IMG/VR virus record: IMGVR_UViG_3300021959_006017 | Location: 62,001 to 126,000 of that record | Length of the DNA stretch: 64,000 bases | Strand: one strand, 5' to 3' | Part shown: one piece after another, positions 2,921-60,618 of the stretch | How positions within the stretch are numbered: the stretch's first letter is position 1 | Layout: each line of letters begins with the position of its first letter | Notes under the pieces: generated by a model | The model's input: only the letters and a program-made list of their open reading frames with translations | What the model was told of the DNA's origin: nothing | The model's database searches: none | Position numbers and translations under genes: made by a program

Positions 2921-3153
2921 TAGAACTTAAAATAGGCATATGGAATTTACTAAAAAAGATTATAGGTGGTTCTTCGCTTACACTTGCCATAGTGTATACA
3001 CTGGGGCATATATTCATTGCAATGACTTGCAATAGATTGATAACAGGAGCGGCATTAGATCTTGCCGCACTAGATGCAATAGTAGAGCCAATTATAAATG
3101 GTTTTTGGTTTTACATACTGCACAACGCATGGAAACGATTTAAAGATGATTAA
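2917..3153 (+). CDS. DUF2061-like small membrane protein
   Basis: YTLGHIFIAM...AIVEPIINGFWFYILHNAW pattern. Confidence 0.65.
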   Translation: MIELKIGIWNLLKKIIGGSSLTLAIVYTLGHIFIAMTCNRLITGAALDLAALDAIVEPIINGFWFYILHNAWKRFKDD

Positions 3154-4117
3154 ATGGGGAATGGTTGGCAACAGTCACGATGCCAGCCTTGCTGTATTTG
3201 AAGACAGTAAACTATTATGGGCTAGTCTAGCAAAAGATTTTTCAGGAGTAGATCACGACCCCGATCTCGATGACACACAACTTAAAGTAGCTATACAAAG
3301 TTTTGGCAAGCCTGATCAAATAGTTTGGTATGAAAAGCCTGGGCTCAAAACATTTAGACAGTGGAGAGCAGGACAAGGATGGCTGTGGAAAGAAAATAAT
3401 ATACGCAGATATCTAAAACGTTGGAACATTACAGCACCCATTACATATACCCAACACCATCTTTCACATGCTGCCTATGCATATTATACCCAGCCACATG
3501 ATGATTGTGCTGTAATATGTTTGGATAGTATAGGAGAGTTCGAGACCCTTACAGTATGGCACGGGATCCGTGGACAACTTAACAAAATATACAGTCAGGG
3601 TTATCCACATAGCCTCGGACTTTTCTATAGTGCTATGACTCAACGTATGGGCCTACAAGCGCAACGTGACGAATACTTAGTAGCCCAATGGGCAAAGAAA
3701 GGCAACGCTAAAAGATTGTCACATGTAATACGAAAAGAACTTATTAATGTTGATCACGAAAGTCGTAGCCCCCAGAAGATTAAGATGAGAGTTAACCTAC
3801 ACAGAGGTTGTCGTTGGTGGAGGCCTGAACTAAACTCACAACAAGATATGTATGATATAGCAGCAGCTACACAAGCTATCTTTGAATACTGTGTAAGCAT
3901 TCTGAGTATATGGGCAAAAGTAAAAACAGACAGTAACCATTTAGCACTAGCAGGTGGCGGCGCATTGAATAAAGATGCAATAGATAAAATAAAAAATCAA
4001 TGGACTAACATATGGGTGCCACCTAATCCTGGCGACCCTGGTAGTTGTATAGGCGCAGTATTAGCAAAGACAGAAACAAAGATAACACTTGACAAACAAT
4101 GGTATAAGAAAGTATAA
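3146..4117 (+). CDS. carbamoyltransferase (NodU/CmcH family), N-terminal Kae1-like domain only
   Basis: SHDASLA, HHLSHAAYAY, DSIGE, SLGLFY, LAGGGALN, PNPGDPGSCIGA; C-terminal domain absent; start set at MIKWG. Confidence 0.82.
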   Translation: MIKWGMVGNSHDASLAVFEDSKLLWASLAKDFSGVDHDPDLDDTQLKVAIQSFGKPDQIVWYEKPGLKTFRQWRAGQGWLWKENNIRRYLKRWNITAPITYTQHHLSHAAYAYYTQPHDDCAVICLDSIGEFETLTVWHGIRGQLNKIYSQGYPHSLGLFYSAMTQRMGLQAQRDEYLVAQWAKKGNAKRLSHVIRKELINVDHESRSPQKIKMRVNLHRGCRWWRPELNSQQDMYDIAAATQAIFEYCVSILSIWAKVKTDSNHLALAGGGALNKDAIDKIKNQWTNIWVPPNPGDPGSCIGAVLAKTETKITLDKQWYKKV

Positions 4118-12150: not shown

Positions 12151-12227
<77 letters not shown>

Positions 12228-12232
12228 ATGCT

Positions 12233-12316
12233 TGGTACCTCCGACCGGACTCGAACCGGTACGCTCATGGCGAGGGATTTTAAGTCCCTTGTGTCTACCA
12301 ATTCCACCACGGAGGC
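12233..12316 (-). tRNA. tRNA-Leu(UAA)
   Basis: GCCTCCG acceptor, CT-TAA-AA loop, long variable arm, encoded CCA. Confidence 0.93.
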
Positions 12317-12324
12317 ATTATGTT

Positions 12325-12401
12325 TGGTGGGCCCTGCGAGACTCGAACTCGCAACCTACGGATTATGAGTCCGGTGCTCTAACCAATTGAGCTAAGAGCC
12401 C
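12325..12401 (-). tRNA. tRNA with CAU anticodon, most likely tRNA-Ile2 (elongator Met not excluded)
   Basis: GGGCTCT acceptor, CT-CAT-AA loop, A73, encoded CCA; resembles ileX-type tRNAs. Confidence 0.88.
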
Positions 12402-39933: not shown

Positions 39934-39974
39934 TAAATACTTTATAAAATATATGCATATAAACAGGAAGAGCC

Positions 39975-40721
39975 ATGCACATTAGAGAATTTACAAAACC
40001 AGTTACAGCAAAGTCACTGAACGAAAGTCTAACAAAACGCTTCGGTGCTAAGATTAATATTGATGGGTTTACTACAGAACAACTACAAGATGTTCGTAAC
40101 AAACTACGTACTAAAGTATTCAATGTCGAAACTACAGAAAGTTTTGATAGTGTACAAAAAGAAGATTACGCTAAGAACAAACTATTTTTAGATGTATTAA
40201 ATGCCGCTATTGCAGAGCGTGATGATAATATTATTGACGCTATCGACGAAGCAGTAGAACAAGTAAACGAAGGCGCAGAAGATGCAGCTGAACTTGTTAT
40301 GGCAGCAAAGGATATGGTTGACCGTGTTACTGGTTGGATGGAAGACACAGCTGAAATGCAAACTGAATCGATGCTAGAACTTGCTGATGCTATTCGCGAT
40401 GAGATGGGCTCTGCTCAAAGCGAATCATTTACAGAAACAGTAAAGCCAGCTCTTGAAGCAATGTATGCAGCAATGGAAACAACTCGAGTTACACTAACAC
40501 AAGGTGTTGGTATGTTAACAGGCGAAGGTGAAGCACCAGAAGCAATGGGTGACGAAGTACCAGCTGAAGAACCAGCAATGGAACCAACAGTTGATGCAGA
40601 AGTTGATGCAGAAGTTGATGCAGCTGATGACGGTATGGGTGCAGCAGATGCAGCAGCCGGAGGCGAAGAGCCAATGGGCCGTGAAAAGCGTGAAAGCGTG
40701 GAACGAAAAAAAAAGATCTAA
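39975..40721 (+). CDS. acidic prohead core/scaffold-like protein ending at a slippery site
   Basis: MHIREF N-terminus, helical middle, Glu/Ala/Pro-rich tail, ends RKKKI. Confidence 0.65.
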   Translation: MHIREFTKPVTAKSLNESLTKRFGAKINIDGFTTEQLQDVRNKLRTKVFNVETTESFDSVQKEDYAKNKLFLDVLNAAIAERDDNIIDAIDEAVEQVNEGAEDAAELVMAAKDMVDRVTGWMEDTAEMQTESMLELADAIRDEMGSAQSESFTETVKPALEAMYAAMETTRVTLTQGVGMLTGEGEAPEAMGDEVPAEEPAMEPTVDAEVDAEVDAADDGMGAADAAAGGEEPMGREKRESVERKKKI

Positions 40722-41035
40722 CTGAGCGCGATGACGCTCTTTTCAATGTACTTGATCATTTAAAGGATTCTGGCAAGAAAGCTGTCAGCATTAAGAAACT
40801 TGATCAGTATATGCGCAATACTCACAACACAGAATTTTCCTACGACACATTTAAAGCAGCTTATGATTCGGATCCACGAATCAAAACTATTGTAACAAAC
40901 TTTGACAAAGACAAAATAGAGTTTAAGCAAAGTGAAGTTGATGATGTACAAAGCAAAGGCGAACCAGGACGTCCTGGTGCTGACGAAGTAGGAAAAATGG
41001 CCAAGAACGCAACTGATCTTGGCGATAAACTATAA
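40709..41035 (+). CDS. -1 frameshift extension of the 39975 ORF (the ORF track lists only 40811-41035)
   Basis: Frame open from 40694 with no start codon before 40811; A-AAA-AAG at 40709-40715 and GAGCG/CGCTC hairpin at 40724-40739. Confidence 0.65.
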   Translation, partial: KKDLTERDDALFNVLDHLKDSGKKAVSIKKLDQYMRNTHNTEFSYDTFKAAYDSDPRIKTIVTNFDKDKIEFKQSEVDDVQSKGEPGRPGADEVGKMAKNATDLGDKL

Positions 41036-41092
41036 AAATAACTTGACAATCAATAATTTAGGTGTTAATATAATAACACTATAGGAGATCTT

Positions 41093-41443
41093 ATGACTGA
41101 AAGAACACAAGAAGATATTGTTAAAAATATCGTTGAAGTATTAGAAAACTATGTTACTCCTGCTGTTGCTGCACACGGCGGCGCAGTAAATTTTGTAAGT
41201 TTTGAACAAGGTGTTGTACTATTAGAGATGAGCGGAGCATGTTCAGGATGTGCTGGAAGCACAATGACACTAAAGTATGGTGCTGAACAAATATTAACGC
41301 AAATGGTACCAGAAGTAATAGCCGTAGAAGGTTTTGATGATCCTTTCTCAGAGGTAGATCCTTTTTACACAGACCCATTCAGTATGCATGATTGGGATAT
41401 GATTAATATGGAAGATACTACTGATGAGCCTGATAACAAATAA
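41093..41443 (+). CDS. NifU/NfuA C-terminal domain Fe-S scaffold protein
   Basis: VTPAVAAHGG, MSGACSGCAGSTMTLKYG. Confidence 0.9.
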   Translation: MTERTQEDIVKNIVEVLENYVTPAVAAHGGAVNFVSFEQGVVLLEMSGACSGCAGSTMTLKYGAEQILTQMVPEVIAVEGFDDPFSEVDPFYTDPFSMHDWDMINMEDTTDEPDNK

Positions 41444-44777: not shown

Positions 44778-47081
44778 ATGTCTAACGGAACAATGATCGT
44801 CAAGCGTGACGGTACAAAAGAACATCTCAACATTGACAAGATACATTTTGTTGTTGAGGAAGCCTGTAAAAATCTAGCAGGTGTAAGCAGCAGTCAAATA
44901 GAAATGAACGCAAATATACAGTTTTATGATGGTATGAGTACTGCTGAGATACAAGAAATTCTTATCCGTAGTGCAAACGATCTTATTTCATTAGACACAC
45001 CAAACTATCAGTTTGCGGCAGCAAGACTTCTTAGTTATGGTTTATACAAACAAGTGTTTGGACAATACTCAGCATTATCACTTGAAAAAATGATTAAAAA
45101 GAATATCGATCGCGGTGTTTATGATGCTGAGATTCTTGAAAAGTATTCCTCCGAAGAAATCGAGCGTATGGAATCATACCTCCATCATAAGCGTGATGAA
45201 AACTTTACCTACGCAGGTCTGCGCCAGGTAGTAGACAAATATCTTGTACAGGATAGAAGCTCGGGTGAGATTTTTGAAACTCCACAGCATATGTATATGA
45301 TGATTGCAGCAACTCTGTTTGCTAACTATCCTAAAGAAGAACGTATGCATTATGTAAGGAGATATTACGATGCGACCTCACTTTTTAAACTCAATATCCC
45401 AACGCCGGTCATGGCCGGAGTGCGTACTCCAGTTAGGCAGTTTGCCTCTTGTGTGCTTGTTGACAGTGACGACACACTCGATTCGATCTTTGCGTCAGAC
45501 ATGTCCATCGGTAGATACACAGCTCAAAGAGCTGGTATCGGTATTAACGCAGGACGTATCAGAGGAGTCAACTCAAGAATCAGAGGCGGTGAAGTAGCAC
45601 ACACAGGCATTATTCCGTTCCTTAAAAAGTTTGAATCAACTGTACGTTGCTGTACACAGAATGGTGTGCGTGGCGGATCAGCTACAACACACTTCCCGTT
45701 TTGGCATCAAGAGATTGAAGACATCCTTGTGCTGAAAAACAACAAAGGTACAGAAGACAATCGTGTTCGTAAACTAGACTACTCAATCCAACTTAACAAA
45801 ACAATGTACGAACGCCTCCTTAGCGGAGGTGAAATTACCTTGTTTTCACCGCATGATGTTCCAGGACTATATGAAGCATACTTTGGTGACCCGGATGCAT
45901 TTAAAGAGCTGTATGAGCAGTATGAGCGTAAAACAAGCATTAAAAAGAAAAAGATTGATGCGATGGAACTGTTCTCAGCACTAATCAAAGAACGTGCAGA
46001 AACAGGACGTATCTACATTATGAATGTTGATCACTGCAACACACATAGCAGTTTCAAAGACACAGTGTACATGAGTAACCTATGTCAAGAGATTACACTA
46101 CCTACAAAGCCACTACAGCACATTGATGACGAGAATGGAGAGATTGCTCTATGTATTTTAAGTGCTATCAATGTAGGCATTATCAAAGACCTAGATGATC
46201 TAGAAGAACTATGTGATCTTGCAGTTCGTGCGCTAGAAGAGATTATTGACTATCAACACTATCCTATTAAGGCAGCAGAGATTTCAACTAAAGCAAGACG
46301 TTCACTAGGTATTGGTTACATTGGACTAGCACACTATCTTGCTAAGAACAAAGTAAACTACGCAGACGCAGAAGCATGGAAACTAGTACATGATCTAACA
46401 GAAGCATTCCAGTACTATTTGCTAAAAGCATCAAACAATCTTGCTAAAGAGCGTGGTGCTTGTGAGTACTTCGACCGCACTAAATACAGTGACGGCATCC
46501 TTCCTATTGACACATACAAGAAGGATGTAGATAATATTGTAGCAAATAACTTAAACTATGATTGGGATACTCTTAGACATAGCATCAAGGAACACGGGCT
46601 CAGGCACTCAACTTTGTCCGCACAGATGCCATCAGAAAGCAGTTCCGTTGTGTCGAACGCAACAAACGGAATCGAGCCACCTAGAGGCTACCTGTCCGTT
46701 AAGAAGTCCAAGAAAGGGCCTCTTAAGCAGATTGTTCCACAGTATCAAACTCTAAAGAATCACTATACATTACTATGGGATATGCCTAGTAATGAAGGTT
46801 ATATCAATACAGTTGCGGTAATGCAAAAGTTTTTTGATCAGGCTATTAGCGGTAACTGGTCATACAACCCAACACAGTATCCAGACAATGAGGTACCGAT
46901 GAGTGTAATGATGCAAGACTTGTTAAACACTTATAAGTATGGATGGAAAACAAGTTACTATCAAAACACTTACGATTATAAAACCGATCCAAGTGATATT
47001 GAAGAAGAAAAGCCACAAGTAGAACTGCCTCAGGGACTGTCTACTGAAGATGACGAAATGTGTGAAGCCTGTGCAATTTAA
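44778..47081 (+). CDS. nrdA: ribonucleotide reductase class Ia alpha subunit with ATP-cone
   Basis: IVKRDG ATP-cone, PTPVMAG, FASCVL, SNLCQEI, MPSESSS, KTSYY, C-terminal CEAC. Confidence 0.96.
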   Translation: MSNGTMIVKRDGTKEHLNIDKIHFVVEEACKNLAGVSSSQIEMNANIQFYDGMSTAEIQEILIRSANDLISLDTPNYQFAAARLLSYGLYKQVFGQYSALSLEKMIKKNIDRGVYDAEILEKYSSEEIERMESYLHHKRDENFTYAGLRQVVDKYLVQDRSSGEIFETPQHMYMMIAATLFANYPKEERMHYVRRYYDATSLFKLNIPTPVMAGVRTPVRQFASCVLVDSDDTLDSIFASDMSIGRYTAQRAGIGINAGRIRGVNSRIRGGEVAHTGIIPFLKKFESTVRCCTQNGVRGGSATTHFPFWHQEIEDILVLKNNKGTEDNRVRKLDYSIQLNKTMYERLLSGGEITLFSPHDVPGLYEAYFGDPDAFKELYEQYERKTSIKKKKIDAMELFSALIKERAETGRIYIMNVDHCNTHSSFKDTVYMSNLCQEITLPTKPLQHIDDENGEIALCILSAINVGIIKDLDDLEELCDLAVRALEEIIDYQHYPIKAAEISTKARRSLGIGYIGLAHYLAKNKVNYADAEAWKLVHDLTEAFQYYLLKASNNLAKERGACEYFDRTKYSDGILPIDTYKKDVDNIVANNLNYDWDTLRHSIKEHGLRHSTLSAQMPSESSSVVSNATNGIEPPRGYLSVKKSKKGPLKQIVPQYQTLKNHYTLLWDMPSNEGYINTVAVMQKFFDQAISGNWSYNPTQYPDNEVPMSVMMQDLLNTYKYGWKTSYYQNTYDYKTDPSDIEEEKPQVELPQGLSTEDDEMCEACAI

Positions 47082-56672: not shown

Positions 56673-58856
56673 ATGGCATTAGGAATATTAGTATTAATCA
56701 CAGCATTAACAATATCAGGCGTAGCAATATATTATAGTGTCGCTGGGCTGGTAGCAATCTTTGCTGCCGCCGCAGTGCCTATTATGATTATGGGCGGCGC
56801 ACTAGAAATAGCAAAACTTGTTACAGCAGTTTGGCTCCATCGGTACTGGCGGCAAACTGTTTGGTGGCTAAAGAGTTACCTTACCCTAGCTGTGGTTGTA
56901 CTAATGCTAATAACTTCTATGGGTATCTTTGGCTTTTTGTCTAAAGCACACATTGAACAAACAAGTGCAAGCCAAGAAAGTGTAGCACAAGTTGAAAGAC
57001 TAACTTCTGAGATTGCACGTCAAGAAGGTATTATTGAACGTGCAGAAACAAAGATCAAACAGTTAGAGTCTAGCGGCACAGGGGCTGATGCTAACATACA
57101 AGCACAAATAGATAAAGAACAAGACCGTATTGACAAAGCATTTGAACGTATTCAGCCTGCTATTGATCAGCAGAATAAGATTATTTCAGATGCAAGAGAA
57201 ACTGACAACACTAGAACTAAACCTTATGAGGATCAGCTTACAAGTATACAAGCTGAAATACTTCGTTTAGAAAACAGTGCTAGAGAATATGAAACTTCTA
57301 TTACAAATCTTGAAGTTAATAACAGTGCGGTAGAACCTTTGCTTGCACAGATTAGTGCTATTGAAGAAGAAATCATTCGTGTAACAAATCAAATCAATAG
57401 TGGTGAAAGATCACAGGTAAGAGCCGCACAAGCTATTATTGGTGTGTCTAGTGACGGATTGTTTGGTAACAACACTAGAGAAGCACTAGCAAAATGGGTA
57501 AGCGGACAGCGTGATCGTATAACACAAATACAAGGCGAAGTTGCTCAGGTACGCAAAGATGCAGGAGCAGAAGTTACAGCAGAGCGTGATCGTTTAGCAG
57601 GTGTTGTTAAAGATATTAGAACAGTTCAAATACCTGCACTAAAAGAACGTGAACTCACAATGCTAGGCAAAATAGACGAAGTACGTCAAACAGAGTCGCC
57701 TGTTATACAAACAGCACGAGATGAAATACAAAGACTACGTAAAAGTGCAGAAGACCAAGTAGCACAGTCACAAGCACTAATAGAAAGACTACGTGGTCAA
57801 CTAGCACAGACAGACAAAGTCGCAGAAATAGATGCGCAAGTACAAGAACAAAACACTCGCATTAAAGATGCAAACGCAGAAATAGATACACTTACTGAAC
57901 AAAAATATGCACTAGAAGCAGAGTATCGCAAACTAGAAGCAGAAGTAGGCCCAGTCAAATATATTGCTGAGTTTGTATATGGCGAAAGTGCAGATACAAA
58001 TCTACTAGAAGAAGCAGTACGCTGGGTGATTCTAGTTATTATATTTGTGTTTGATCCACTAGCAGTTCTACTATTAATCGCAAGCCAATATACCTTTGAG
58101 TTTCATCGCAAACGCAAGGATGACGACGGTGAGCGTCTTCGGCTCGAGAGACAAGAATACGAGCAAGCAAGAGCACAGCGCATAGTTGACAACCCTGGCT
58201 ATAATATTGATGATCCTGCGACGGCTGAAGAAAAGGAAGAAGTAAATGACGTTGGAACAGCTGAAGCTGATGTTGGACAACTTGGAGCCAGCGATAATGG
58301 AAGAGACACTGCCGAAGGAATGGCTGTGGCCGGAGAAGGAGTAGAAGATGCAAGAGTGGATGAACCTACAGACAGCAATATACAAGATGGTAATGTGGAA
58401 CTTGATGAACGAAATCGAGAAGCCGATGATGAGGAAAGTATATCGGGATGGAGCGATGTGGAACTTGACGAAGAACAAGTTCCTGACAGTAGCGAAACCC
58501 AAGAAGGAACTAGTACCGAGCAGGACCCCGGAGGAAGTGCTACAGCACCTGAACAGGTAGAATCAAAAAAAAAGGTAGAACCTACCGCATTGTTGGAAGA
58601 GTCAAAAAGGGAAGCTGAGTACGAAGCTAAAGAAGAAACCGAAGAGTGGAAGCAAGGCAAAGTAAAGTGGAAGGCAGAACATCCAGAAGACACCCTCAAG
58701 AGATATAAAAACTTATATATAAAAGGTGTAATAGATGAATTACCTTGGGAAAGACCACAGTATACAACTGTAGAAGAGCCCGAAGGTTACCAACAAAATG
58801 CGGAACAAAATGAATCAAGCATCTTTAACAGAATTAGACGAACTGAACAAGATTAA
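56673..58856 (+). CDS. large membrane coiled-coil protein (DUF4407-like) with putative peptidoglycan-binding motif
   Basis: 3 N-terminal TMs, long heptad region, SDGLFGNNTREAL, FDPLAV TM, acidic tail. Confidence 0.65.
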   Translation: MALGILVLITALTISGVAIYYSVAGLVAIFAAAAVPIMIMGGALEIAKLVTAVWLHRYWRQTVWWLKSYLTLAVVVLMLITSMGIFGFLSKAHIEQTSASQESVAQVERLTSEIARQEGIIERAETKIKQLESSGTGADANIQAQIDKEQDRIDKAFERIQPAIDQQNKIISDARETDNTRTKPYEDQLTSIQAEILRLENSAREYETSITNLEVNNSAVEPLLAQISAIEEEIIRVTNQINSGERSQVRAAQAIIGVSSDGLFGNNTREALAKWVSGQRDRITQIQGEVAQVRKDAGAEVTAERDRLAGVVKDIRTVQIPALKERELTMLGKIDEVRQTESPVIQTARDEIQRLRKSAEDQVAQSQALIERLRGQLAQTDKVAEIDAQVQEQNTRIKDANAEIDTLTEQKYALEAEYRKLEAEVGPVKYIAEFVYGESADTNLLEEAVRWVILVIIFVFDPLAVLLLIASQYTFEFHRKRKDDDGERLRLERQEYEQARAQRIVDNPGYNIDDPATAEEKEEVNDVGTAEADVGQLGASDNGRDTAEGMAVAGEGVEDARVDEPTDSNIQDGNVELDERNREADDEESISGWSDVELDEEQVPDSSETQEGTSTEQDPGGSATAPEQVESKKKVEPTALLEESKREAEYEAKEETEEWKQGKVKWKAEHPEDTLKRYKNLYIKGVIDELPWERPQYTTVEEPEGYQQNAEQNESSIFNRIRRTEQD

Positions 58857-59250: not shown

Positions 59251-59476
59251 TAAAGACCGTGTTAAAACAGGTCTTACAGTTGAAGTCCGTAATGGCGACT
59301 TCGCTTACGCATTGCGTAAGTTTAAAAAGAAAGTTCAAGAAGATGGTATTCTTCAAGAACTACGTGAAAGACAACACTACACCAAACCAAGCGAAAAACG
59401 CAAAAAAGCAAAAGCAGCAGGTCGTGCCCGCTGGTTGAAAAAACAACGTAAACAGGAACAAGAACGAGGCTTCTAA
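59228..59476 (+). CDS. rpsU: 30S ribosomal protein bS21
   Basis: [19 protein letters not shown]...[19 protein letters not shown]. Confidence 0.92.
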
Positions 59477-60618
59477 TGCGCATCGAACAAGACGTTAAAC
59501 TTGACTACAAGGACGTACTCATACGGCCTAAGCGTTCAACACTAGGATCACGCAAGGAAGTAGACCTAGAACGAGGTTACACATTCCGTAACTATACTTC
59601 AGACTTTCCAGATAATATAGAAGAACGTCATTGGCGTGGCATTCCTCTTATGGCTGCTAACATGGATGGCGTTGGCACATTTGAAATGGCTGACCAACTT
59701 GCAACTGCAGGTATCTTCACTTGCTTAGTTAAAACTTATAGCGTAGAACAACTAGTAGAGTACTTTGATACAGATATGTATGAACGTACAAACTATGTCG
59801 CTATGAGCATTGGCATTAATGGCAGTGACTGGAACAAGTTTAAAAGTGTATATGAACGTGCAGACGGTAATCTAAAATACGTTTGCATTGACGTAGCAAA
59901 CGGATATTCAAATCGCTTCCGTGACTTTGTTGCAGAAATGCGTAAGACATATCCAAATATTGTAATCATCGCTGGAAATGTAGTAACTGGCGAAATGACG
60001 GAGGAACTTATTCTTGCTGGCGCAGATATTATTAAAGTGGGCATCGGCCCTGGAAGTGTTTGTACAACACGGATCCAAACTGGTGTTGGTTACCCTCAGC
60101 TTTCCGCTGTTATTGAGTGCGCTGATGCTGCTCACGGTCTTGGTGGCCATATCATTGCGGATGGTGGCTGCACTACTCCTGGCGATGTAGCCAAAGCATT
60201 TGCCGCTGGAGCAGACTTTGTAATGCTAGGTGGTATGCTTGCCGGACACGATGAAGGCGGCGGCGAAGTAATCACAAAGCACTATGCAAACAATGAATAC
60301 ACAAGACAAGATGATGGTACTTATGTGCCACACTTTGAACAAAGACACTTTGTACAGTTTTACGGCATGAGCAGTAAAAGTGCAAATGAAAAGCATTTCG
60401 GAGGATTGAAAGATTATCGTTCCTCGGAAGGCAGGACAGTCCTTGTACCCTACAGGGGATCTGTGGGTATAACCGTACAAGAAATACTCGGGGGTATTAG
60501 GTCTGCCTGTACGTATGCTGGAGCAGTGCGCTTGAAGCACCTATCTAAGTGTACAACATTTGTTCGTTGTACTCAAACTCATAACTCTGTTTATGAAAAA
60601 AGCACGATTGGCAAATGA
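59476..60618 (+). CDS. guaC: GMP reductase
   Basis: [54 protein letters not shown]. Confidence 0.94.

What the first reader, a model, noticed from the sequence alone, without database searches (positions are those of the whole stretch)
40694..41035. Candidate programmed -1 ribosomal frameshift extending a head scaffold-like protein
Seen: ORF 39975-40721 ends CGA AAA AAA AAG ATC TAA, giving the heptamer A-AAA-AAG (40709-15). A GAGCG-cgatga-CGCTC hairpin starts 8 nt downstream. The -1 frame is open from 40694 to 41035 and encodes protein-like sequence (DLTERDDALFNVLDHLKDSGKKAVSIKKLDQYM...) with no ATG or GTG start until 40811. Established: A-AAA-AAG plus a 3' stem-loop is the classic bacterial -1 signal (dnaX, IS3 family). 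Inference: two stoichiometric isoforms of a head assembly protein, a recoding event better known in phage tail chaperones.
Basis: partly seen in the sequence, partly recalled or inferred. Interest (0 to 1): 0.68.

Follow-up and report, generated by a model that had tools for sequence, protein, structure and literature searches.

The report
Conserved -1 recoding site, jumbo phage
A run of nine A's at the end of a gene in an uncultured marine jumbo phage lets part of the protein output continue into the -1 frame and gain a winged-helix domain; the device is kept in every close relative examined, but nothing shows the protein is a head scaffold.

Summary
ORF1 (39975-40721) ends CGA AAA AAA AAG ATC TAA. 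The -1 frame is open from 40694 to 41035 and has no ATG, GTG or TTG before 40811.

The recoding reading is strongly supported by comparison. All 101 related viral loci (56 distinct junctions) have an A9 (52) or A8 (4) run followed by G at the end of ORF1. In all of them the downstream homolog lies in the -1 frame, without a conserved start codon. Protein conservation begins right after the run. Independent assemblies give A9.

A divergent relative encodes both parts in one frame (A11 run). More distant lineages have two separate genes with their own ATG and no run.

The predicted long product is 353 aa: ORF1 plus a winged-helix-like domain and a disordered tail with a conserved C-terminal motif.

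Two parts of the reading are not supported. The window's hairpin is no better than chance (z = -0.79) and is missing in the nearest relative, although one subclade has a strong, covarying hairpin. "Head scaffold" has no support; function is unknown.

Ribosomal -1 frameshifting is favoured, but RNA-polymerase slippage on A9 cannot be excluded. This is a new member of a known kind.

The parts
39965..39972 (+). Shine-Dalgarno-like AGGAAGAG just upstream of the ORF1 start codon at 39975
   Evidence: Read directly from the sequence. No comparable motif precedes the ATG at 40811.
39975..40721 (+). ORF1, 248 aa (P0001). Predicted helical N-terminal part, a long helical hairpin (residues 99-182, nearly invariant across relatives) and a disordered acidic tail ending GREKRESVERKKKI. 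This is the short isoform.
   Evidence: family of at least 4970 protein clusters; alignment A3; AF2 model, pLDDT 62.
40706..40715 (+). Shift site: A9 run plus G. The heptamer A AAA AAG is at 40709-40715, in 0-frame phase.
   Evidence: Among 56 distinct relatives the run is A9 in 52 and A8 in 4, always followed by G, and in A AAA AAG phase in 54. The third base of the preceding codon is A whatever the amino acid: TCA, CCA, CGA, TTA. Independent assemblies show A9.
40719..40721 (+). 0-frame stop codon TAA, one codon after the heptamer
   Evidence: In relatives the stop lies 0-6 nt after the G, and directly adjacent (AAG TAA) in 35 of 56.
40724..40739 (+). Small hairpin, GAGCG / loop CGATGA / CGCTC, followed by TTTT. 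A possible but unsupported stimulator; it also fits a terminator-like pattern.
   Evidence: MFE -7.8, z = -0.79. It is the only terminator-like hit, against 1.1 expected. It sits at the 40th percentile of its own gene's background. Not conserved in L025.
40715..41035 (+). -1 frame extension: 106 codons plus stop. Predicted long isoform = ORF1 residues 1-247 plus these 106 residues = 353 aa.
   Evidence: Alignment A1 has 51 sequences and 54% mean column identity. Third codon positions vary most, including in the 32 codons before the first ATG.
40715..40930 (+). Winged-helix-like domain (extension residues 1-72). Its first helix lies upstream of the first ATG at 40811.
   Evidence: AF2 model with pLDDT 70-89 over residues 1-70 and topology H-E-H-H-H-E-E. 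Foldseek and VIA matches are all winged-helix domains: MCM WH, JetB/MukE, Stn1, cullin WHB; Z = 5-6.7.
40988..41023 (+). Conserved C-terminal motif VGKMAKNATDLG at the end of a disordered linker
   Evidence: M95, A96 and A99 are invariant, and V92 and K97 are at least 90% conserved in A1. pLDDT is below 50 for residues 76-103.
41043..41071 (+). Promoter-like site (TTGACA, 17 nt spacer, TAATAT, with TG) ahead of the next gene (NifU-like, 41093-41443). It marks the 3' boundary of the unit.

Best explanation
This is a programmed -1 recoding site at the 3' end of a conserved gene of unknown function in an uncultured marine jumbo phage.

Most ribosomes finish ORF1 at TAA 40719-40721 and make the 248-aa form. 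A fraction ends up in the -1 frame at the A9G tract (40706-40715) and continues to 41035. That gives a 353-aa form carrying a winged-helix-like domain and a flexible tail with a conserved C-terminal motif.

Shown by comparison:
- The tract and the -1 arrangement are conserved.
- The downstream frame has no conserved start codon.
- The downstream frame is protein-coding from the first codon after the tract.
- The two parts occur as a single-frame fusion in one relative and as two adjacent genes in distant lineages.

Inferred:
- The event is mainly ribosomal -1 frameshifting. Two tRNA-Lys slip from AAA AAG to A AAA AA, helped by the nearby 0-frame stop and, in some clades, by a 3' hairpin.
- RNA-polymerase slippage on A9 (mRNA with A10) may contribute. 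It would give an identical protein.
- Two isoforms in a set ratio are the point of the device.

My odds: recoding of some kind about 0.9; ribosomal as the main route about 0.6.
For: - In 101 of 101 related loci the downstream homolog is in the -1 frame relative to the ORF1 homolog.
- 56 distinct junctions have A9 (52) or A8 (4) followed by G, with G as the third codon base in 54.
- First in-frame start codons are scattered from -34 to +113 nt around the ORF1 stop, while protein similarity begins directly after the run.
- Codon-position variation (3rd > 1st > 2nd) holds in the 32 codons before the first ATG.
- Helix 1 of the predicted domain lies upstream of that ATG.
- The tract persists through changes of the ORF1 tail and through insertion of a DUF3008 module just before it.
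- Gene callers across databases start the downstream ORF at internal Met/GTG/TTG codons. P0134's 'start' is a GTG directly after TCA AAA AAA AAG TGA.
- P0243 in syntenic contig L105 is an in-frame ORF1+extension fusion.
- It is not an assembly artefact. Two independent samples give A9. At a second A8-A10 run in the same phages, 59 of 59 distinct relatives compared across the site keep the reading frame.
- The genome avoids long A runs. 27 of 30 Lys runs are broken by AAG, and the three exceptions are all xxA AAA AAA AAG.
- For the ribosomal route: G always follows the run, the A AAA AAG phase holds in 54 of 56, the A8 variants still hold the heptamer, and the stop is adjacent in 35 of 56. 21 of 56 have a hairpin in the lowest 5% of their own gene's folding energies, starting 2-11 nt after the G. 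Paired cells are 64% against 32-44% when slid, and the covariation score is 0.215 against 0.05-0.11.
- No phage tRNA-Lys is among the 11 tRNAs of the 237-kb record.
Against: - There is no expression evidence. The RNA runs held only conserved bits of relatives, as contigs.
- The window's own hairpin is at chance level and is not shared with the nearest relative. There is no consensus structure over all relatives.
- No Shine-Dalgarno-like stimulator is seen upstream (by eye).
- The run is three A's longer than a heptamer needs. That length is kept through different preceding codons, which is the hallmark of slippage by RNA polymerase on runs of 9 A or T (PMC5009743).
- Two junctions carry the run in another phase (L025, L101). 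One relative has A11 with the fusion in frame and stops close by in both other frames. Both patterns fit polymerase slippage as well or better.
- In four junctions (L047/L049, L053, L064) an ATG or TTG lies in the -1 frame 34 nt before the ORF1 stop, so independent initiation cannot be excluded there.
Confidence: 0.6

Rival explanations
1. The same two isoforms arise mainly by transcriptional slippage. RNA polymerase stutters on the A9 template run, part of the mRNA carries A10, and standard translation of that mRNA gives the fusion.
For: - The A9 length is kept in 52 of 56 junctions although a heptamer needs only six A's plus G.
- The ninth A sits at the third base of Ser, Pro, Arg or Leu codons.
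- Slippage on runs of 9 A or T is efficient in bacteria and is used by Thermus thermophilus dnaX (PMC5009743).
- Phase-shifted variants L025 and L101 exist.
- L105 has A11, the long form in frame, and stops within 2-5 codons in both other frames, which is the Thermus dnaX layout.
- The hairpin is absent or at chance level in over half of the relatives, including the window.
- The genome-wide avoidance of long A runs suggests such runs are costly here.
Against: - G follows the run in 56 of 56, and the A AAA AAG phase holds in 54 of 56.
- The A8 variants keep the arrangement, although slippage falls steeply below 9.
- A subclade has a strong covarying 3' hairpin at frameshift-stimulator distance.
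- The stop is adjacent to the heptamer in 35 of 56.
- In-frame A9 runs are tolerated and conserved at a second gene. That would waste product if slippage were efficient.
Confidence: 0.28
2. There are two independent genes and no recoding. The downstream ORF is initiated on its own, at ATG 40811 or at a non-canonical codon, or by reinitiation after the ORF1 stop.
For: - Distant lineages have a separate downstream gene with its own ATG and no A run: L108/L110 with AGGA 8 nt upstream, L111 with an ATGA overlap, L107 with TAATG.
- A few junctions have an ATG or TTG in the -1 frame before the run.
Against: - There is no ATG, GTG or TTG between 40694 and 40811, and no Shine-Dalgarno motif before 40811.
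- Amino-acid conservation and the coding signature start 32 codons upstream of that ATG.
- Helix 1 of the fold would be lost.
- First start positions differ among relatives.
- A constant -1 relation in 101 of 101 loci, with a fixed A8-9G run, is not expected for independent genes.
Confidence: 0.05
3. It is an artefact or decay: a homopolymer miscount in assembly, or a frameshift mutation that broke a once-continuous gene.
For: - Homopolymers are error-prone.
- One relative (L105) has the two parts in one frame, with A11.
Against: - The sequence across the run is identical in two independent samples.
- 56 distinct contigs from many metagenomes share the -1 layout.
- 59 of 59 distinct relatives keep the frame across another A8-A10 run.
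- The extension is under purifying selection.
Confidence: 0.02

Closest known systems
E. coli dnaX tau/gamma -1 programmed ribosomal frameshift
   Same: Same slippery heptamer, A AAA AAG, decoded by tRNA-Lys. Two isoforms come from one gene. A 3' stem-loop is present in part of this family.
   Different: In dnaX the shift truncates the protein; here it extends ORF1 by 106 residues. dnaX has exactly six A's, an upstream Shine-Dalgarno-like stimulator and a strong obligatory hairpin. Here the run is A9, no upstream stimulator is seen, and the hairpin is clade-specific. The proteins are unrelated.
IS3-family (IS911, IS150, IS3) orfA-orfB transposase frameshift
   Same: A AAA AAG lies at the end of an upstream ORF. 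The downstream -1 ORF lacks an efficient start of its own. The fusion product joins two domains, and the short product is made as well.
   Different: This is not a mobile element and there is no transposase homology. Here the nucleic-acid-binding-type fold (winged helix) is in the added part, not in the upstream ORF.
Thermus thermophilus dnaX, and Shigella spa13/mxiE: programmed transcriptional slippage on A9/T9
   Same: A homopolymer of nine A's conserved at the nucleotide level. Relative L105 (A11, long form in frame, stops close by in both other frames) has the Thermus dnaX layout.
   Different: mRNA heterogeneity was not tested here. The always-present G and the heptamer phase are features those systems do not need.
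Tail assembly chaperone G/GT frameshift of lambda-like and many other tailed phages
   Same: A phage gene pair fused by a conserved -1 shift near the end of the first ORF. The arrangement is conserved although the sequences diverge.
   Different: The gene is not upstream of a tape-measure gene. It lies among replication and metabolism genes and has no homology to chaperones.
T7 gene 10A/10B and Listeria phage PSA capsid/tail frameshifts
   Same: C-terminally extended minor isoforms of a phage protein made by recoding.
   Different: Those are proven structural proteins. Here a virion role is not shown.

Membership tests
Programmed -1 ribosomal frameshift cassette (X XXY YYZ type) | Slippery heptamer in the 0-frame phase | tested here: met
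   A AAA AAG at 40709-40715. The same phase holds in 54 of 56 relatives; the other 2 have A AAA AAA.
Programmed -1 ribosomal frameshift cassette (X XXY YYZ type) | Overlapping -1 ORF that is coding, conserved and lacks its own start | tested here: met
Programmed -1 ribosomal frameshift cassette (X XXY YYZ type) | Shift site conserved at the nucleotide level among homologs | tested here: met
   56 of 56 junctions. The rest of the genome breaks Lys runs with AAG in 27 of 30 cases.
Programmed -1 ribosomal frameshift cassette (X XXY YYZ type) | 3' stimulatory RNA structure 5-9 nt downstream | tested here: inconclusive
   In the window, z = -0.79. There is no consensus over all relatives. The structure is strong, with compensatory changes, in 21 of 56.
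Programmed -1 ribosomal frameshift cassette (X XXY YYZ type) | Trans-frame protein detected | not testable with these tools
   No proteomics is available, and the RNA runs were contigs of relatives only.
Programmed transcriptional slippage (Thermus dnaX type) | Homopolymer of about 9 or more A/T conserved in length | tested here: met
   A9 in 52 of 56, kept through different preceding codons.
Programmed transcriptional slippage (Thermus dnaX type) | Heterogeneous mRNA (A10, A11 and so on) from an A9 template | not testable with these tools
   Only assembled contigs were available; they drop minor variants.
Phage head scaffolding protein | Homology to a known scaffolding family | tested here: not met
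   Pfam: none. PHROGs: only a partial match to phrog_14154 'virion structural protein'. PDB profile search: none. Fold search: none.
Phage head scaffolding protein | Position in a head-morphogenesis module (portal, protease, major capsid) | tested here: not met
   The neighbours are small unknown ORFs, NifU, an exonuclease, a fibre-like protein and RNR. The same synteny is seen in L105 and L108.
Phage head scaffolding protein | Helical, acidic, partly disordered protein | tested here: met
   This feature is not specific.
Tail assembly chaperone G/GT | Gene pair immediately upstream of the tape-measure gene | tested here: not met
Winged-helix domain (the extension) | H-S-H-H-S-S fold | tested here: met
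   AF2 topology. All top structural matches are winged-helix domains, Z = 5-6.7 and Foldseek probability up to 0.99. No sequence family was assigned.

The most novel reading that the evidence does not exclude
Homopolymer slippage may be a lineage-wide expression device in these marine jumbo phages, not a single site.

- The genome breaks nearly every Lys run with AAG, yet keeps exactly three xxA AAA AAA AAG tracts.
- One tract extends a protein (this finding).
- Two tracts (window 58565-58573 and genome position 205662) lie in frame with stops close by in both other frames. They would make truncated isoforms, as in dnaX.
- The same gene pair exists in three encodings across the family: separate genes, -1 recoding, and an in-frame A11 fusion.

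This would give a natural series for how recoding sites are born and lost, possibly tied to a particular polymerase or host tRNA-Lys set.
Probability: 0.2. Interest if true: 0.75.

Novelty: new member of a known kind. Interest (0 to 1): 0.55.

Why it matters
- The gene family is very common in marine and estuarine viromes (at least 4970 clusters at 90% identity) and is annotated everywhere as two unrelated hypothetical ORFs or as a truncated one. Recognising the recoding corrects the gene model to a 353-aa two-domain protein plus a 248-aa short form.
- The fusion links two proteins that are separate in related phages, which is a Rosetta-stone hint that they work together.
- It adds a well-conserved case outside tail chaperones, capsid genes, dnaX and IS elements.
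- The family holds ancestral (two genes), recoded and in-frame states side by side, so it can be used to study how such sites evolve.
- It is also a clean natural test bed for telling ribosomal from polymerase slippage on A9G.

Tried and rejected
- Cultured-phage searches with DNA and with both proteins found nothing. P0279 gave only a weak hit to a hypothetical protein of Sinorhizobium phage Phosso, in an uninformative context. P0154 found nothing.
- Function searches for ORF1 were empty: Pfam and PHROGs, a PDB profile search, Foldseek on the AF2 model and the ESM Atlas.
- The names some sources give to relatives (SepF-like, ATP synthase b, myosin, FliE) look like coiled-coil noise and were not used.
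- RNAalifold on 55 junctions gave no consensus structure. I therefore do not claim a family-wide stimulator.
- The read check was limited. All runs were Logan contigs, the RNA runs held only conserved pieces of relatives, and none spans this window's run. Transcript heterogeneity could not be assessed.
- P0134 looked like a free-standing homolog with its own start. The DNA shows the 'M' is a GTG directly after the A9G tract, so it is not a counter-example.
- The T4 Gp23 family search in the genome's own record was uninformative because nothing rang in the controls either.
- Site 4 (T9 at genome position 231313) is an intergenic terminator-like hairpin, not coding.
- Paper searches found no description of this site. 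The held library is incomplete.

Full report
**What is in the window**

ORF1 runs from 39975 to 40721 (248 aa, P0001). It has a Shine-Dalgarno-like AGGAAGAG just upstream and ends CGA AAA AAA AAG ATC TAA. The A run is 40706-40714 and G is at 40715, so A AAA AAG sits in the 0-frame phase at 40709-40715.

The -1 frame is open from 40694 to the stop at 41033-41035. Its first ATG, GTG or TTG is the ATG at 40811. A 5-bp GC-rich stem (40724-40739) starts 8 nt after the heptamer.

**Is it more than chance?**

Inside this one window it is not:
- A8 words are no more frequent than in shuffles (5 found against 8.2 expected).
- The hairpin folds no better than shuffled sequence (-7.8 kcal/mol, z = -0.79).

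The case rests on comparison. The window belongs to a 236,751-bp viral record, estimated 67% complete. Its DnaB-type helicase is closest, at about 50% identity, to jumbo phages PA5oct and Atu_ph07. Cultured phages have no homolog of either ORF. Viral metagenome contigs hold 563 relatives of ORF1, and protein databases hold at least 4970 clusters.

**The comparative evidence**

In all 101 fetched loci that contain both parts, the homolog of the downstream frame lies in the -1 frame relative to the ORF1 homolog. Collapsing identical sequences leaves 56 distinct junctions, with ORF1 identity down to 59%:
- 52 have A9 and 4 have A8. None is shorter or longer.
- G follows the run in all 56.
- G is the third base of a 0-frame codon in 54. 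The other two read AAA AAA AAA G.
- The 0-frame stop lies 0-6 nt after the G, and directly adjacent in 35.
- The codon before the run is TCA, CCA, CGA or TTA, which are four different amino acids that all end in A. The run length is therefore kept at the nucleotide level.

The site also survives other changes around it:
- The ORF1 tail changes and ORF1 length ranges from 241 to 312 aa.
- In some relatives a DUF3008 module is inserted right before the run.

**The downstream frame is a real coding extension**

- Translations starting at the first codon after the run align along their whole length (51 sequences, 54% mean column identity).
- The first possible start codons are scattered from -34 to +113 nt around the ORF1 stop.
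- Third codon positions vary most and second positions least, including in the 32 codons before the window's first ATG.
- A profile search of 1.84 billion representatives found 481 homologs. Most are 65-131-aa gene calls that begin inside the domain at an internal Met, GTG or TTG. That is what gene callers produce when no true start exists. One apparent free-standing homolog (P0134) starts at a GTG directly after TCA AAA AAA AAG TGA.

**It is not an artefact**

- Contigs from two other samples span the run with no difference and no gap (X6 record 22 and X7 record 31).
- As an internal control, a second A8-A10 run in the same phages (window 58565-58573) is present in 50 of 59 distinct relatives. 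The reading frame is kept across that site in all 59, so these assemblies do not miscount such runs.
- In the 237-kb record, 27 of 30 Lys runs are broken by AAG, with a longest A run of 7 or less. The only three encoded AAA AAA AAG are each preceded by xxA and give A9G; this site is one of them.

**Evolutionary context**

- A divergent but syntenic relative (L105, P0243, 376 aa) encodes ORF1 and the extension in one frame. Its run is A11, and both other frames stop within a few codons.
- More distant syntenic lineages (L108/L110, L111, L107) have two separate genes. The ORF1 homolog ends without an A run. The downstream gene has its own ATG (TAA-n-ATG with AGGA upstream, an ATGA overlap, or TAATG) and is often much longer, at 458-771 aa.

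The pair is thus linked across the whole group, and the window's clade joins it by recoding.

**What the products look like**

- ORF1 is predicted to be all-helical. It has a nearly invariant helical hairpin (residues 99-182) and a disordered acidic tail.
- The extension has a winged-helix-like fold over residues 1-72 (pLDDT 70-89). All structural matches are winged-helix domains, with Z = 5-6.7 and no specific family.
- After the domain comes a disordered linker and a conserved motif, VGKMAKNATDLG.
- No function can be assigned. 'Head scaffold' rests only on a weak, partial PHROG match, and the neighbours are not head genes.

**Mechanism**

Ribosomal -1 frameshifting and RNA-polymerase slippage (A10 mRNA) give the same protein.

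For the ribosomal route:
- the invariant G;
- the heptamer phase in 54 of 56;
- A8 variants that still hold the heptamer;
- the adjacent stop codon;
- a subclade (21 of 56) with a hairpin in the lowest 5% of its own gene's folding energies, starting 2-11 nt after the G, with compensatory changes (64% of cells paired against 32-44% when slid; covariation 0.215 against 0.05-0.11).

For polymerase slippage:
- the conserved length of nine, the length at which bacterial polymerases slip efficiently (PMC5009743);
- the two phase-shifted variants;
- the A11 in-frame relative, whose layout matches Thermus dnaX;
- the lack of any structure in over half of the relatives, the window included.

I put recoding at about 0.9. 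Within it, ribosomal is about 0.6 and polymerase about 0.3 as the main route.

**Verdict**

This is a real, conserved recoding site in a new and very common phage gene family. The mechanism is of a known kind. The hairpin and the scaffold label are not supported for this window.

Noticed in passing
window 58565-58573 (ORF 56673-58856, + strand): A second A9G tract with the same codons (TCA AAA AAA AAG GTA) lies in frame inside a 727-aa protein of unknown function. The -1 frame stops after about 17 codons and the +1 frame stops at once (AGG TAG). An A8-A10 run is kept in 50 of 59 distinct relatives, and the frame is kept across the site in all 59. It could give a truncated isoform, as in dnaX, or it could be only a conserved SKKK motif.
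   Followed up: partly
own genome G000:C1:205662-205670 (outside the window; L192): A third A9G tract, GAA TCA AAA AAA AAG GTA G, almost identical in its flanks to the second. It lies in frame in a 249-aa protein that carries a DUF3008-like stretch and a MAKEAT motif resembling the extension's MAKNAT. Both other frames stop within 2-5 codons. The run is present in 24 of 57 distinct fetched relatives, many of which were cut short.
   Followed up: partly
whole record G000 (236,751 bp): Lys runs avoid long A tracts. 27 of 30 KKK motifs are broken by AAG, none is AAA AAA AAA, and the three exceptions are the three A9G tracts. No tRNA-Lys is among the 11 phage tRNAs.
   Followed up: yes
L105 3792-3802 (Logan contig of 17.7 kb): A relative in which ORF1 and the winged-helix extension are one 376-aa ORF, with an A11 run at the junction. 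Seen in a single contig, so the run length itself needs read-level confirmation.
   Followed up: partly
relatives L003, L005, L007, L046, L076 and others, about 45-70 nt after the shift site: A second, GC-rich inverted repeat (GCGGCC ... GGCCGC) inside the codons for KAAGVAAL gives a dip in mean folding energy at +30 to +50 nt. It is too far away for a usual frameshift stimulator. It is absent from the window.
   Followed up: no
ORF1 relatives P0107 (residues 251-306) and P0279 (residues 83-135): The 57-residue DUF3008 module sits at different places in ORF1 homologs: at the C-terminal end just before the shift site, or in the variable region after the N-terminal domain. It is absent from the window's ORF1.
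   Followed up: partly
window 12151-12401 (- strand): A cluster of three tRNA genes: Arg-TCT, Leu-TAA and Met-CAT.
   Followed up: no
window 41093-41443, 3098-4117, 44778-47081, 59476-60618: Auxiliary-type genes in a jumbo phage: a NifU-like domain protein, a Nol-like carbamoyltransferase, a class I ribonucleotide reductase large subunit with an ATP cone, and a dehydrogenase.
   Followed up: no
Read laying loose end, run X19 at window 40705: An RNA-library contig of a relative reads ...CATTACTAAAAAAGTAAAAAAAGAATCTGT at the junction. It has two shorter A runs (A6 and A7) instead of one A9, which hints at further junction variants in salt-marsh samples.
   Followed up: no
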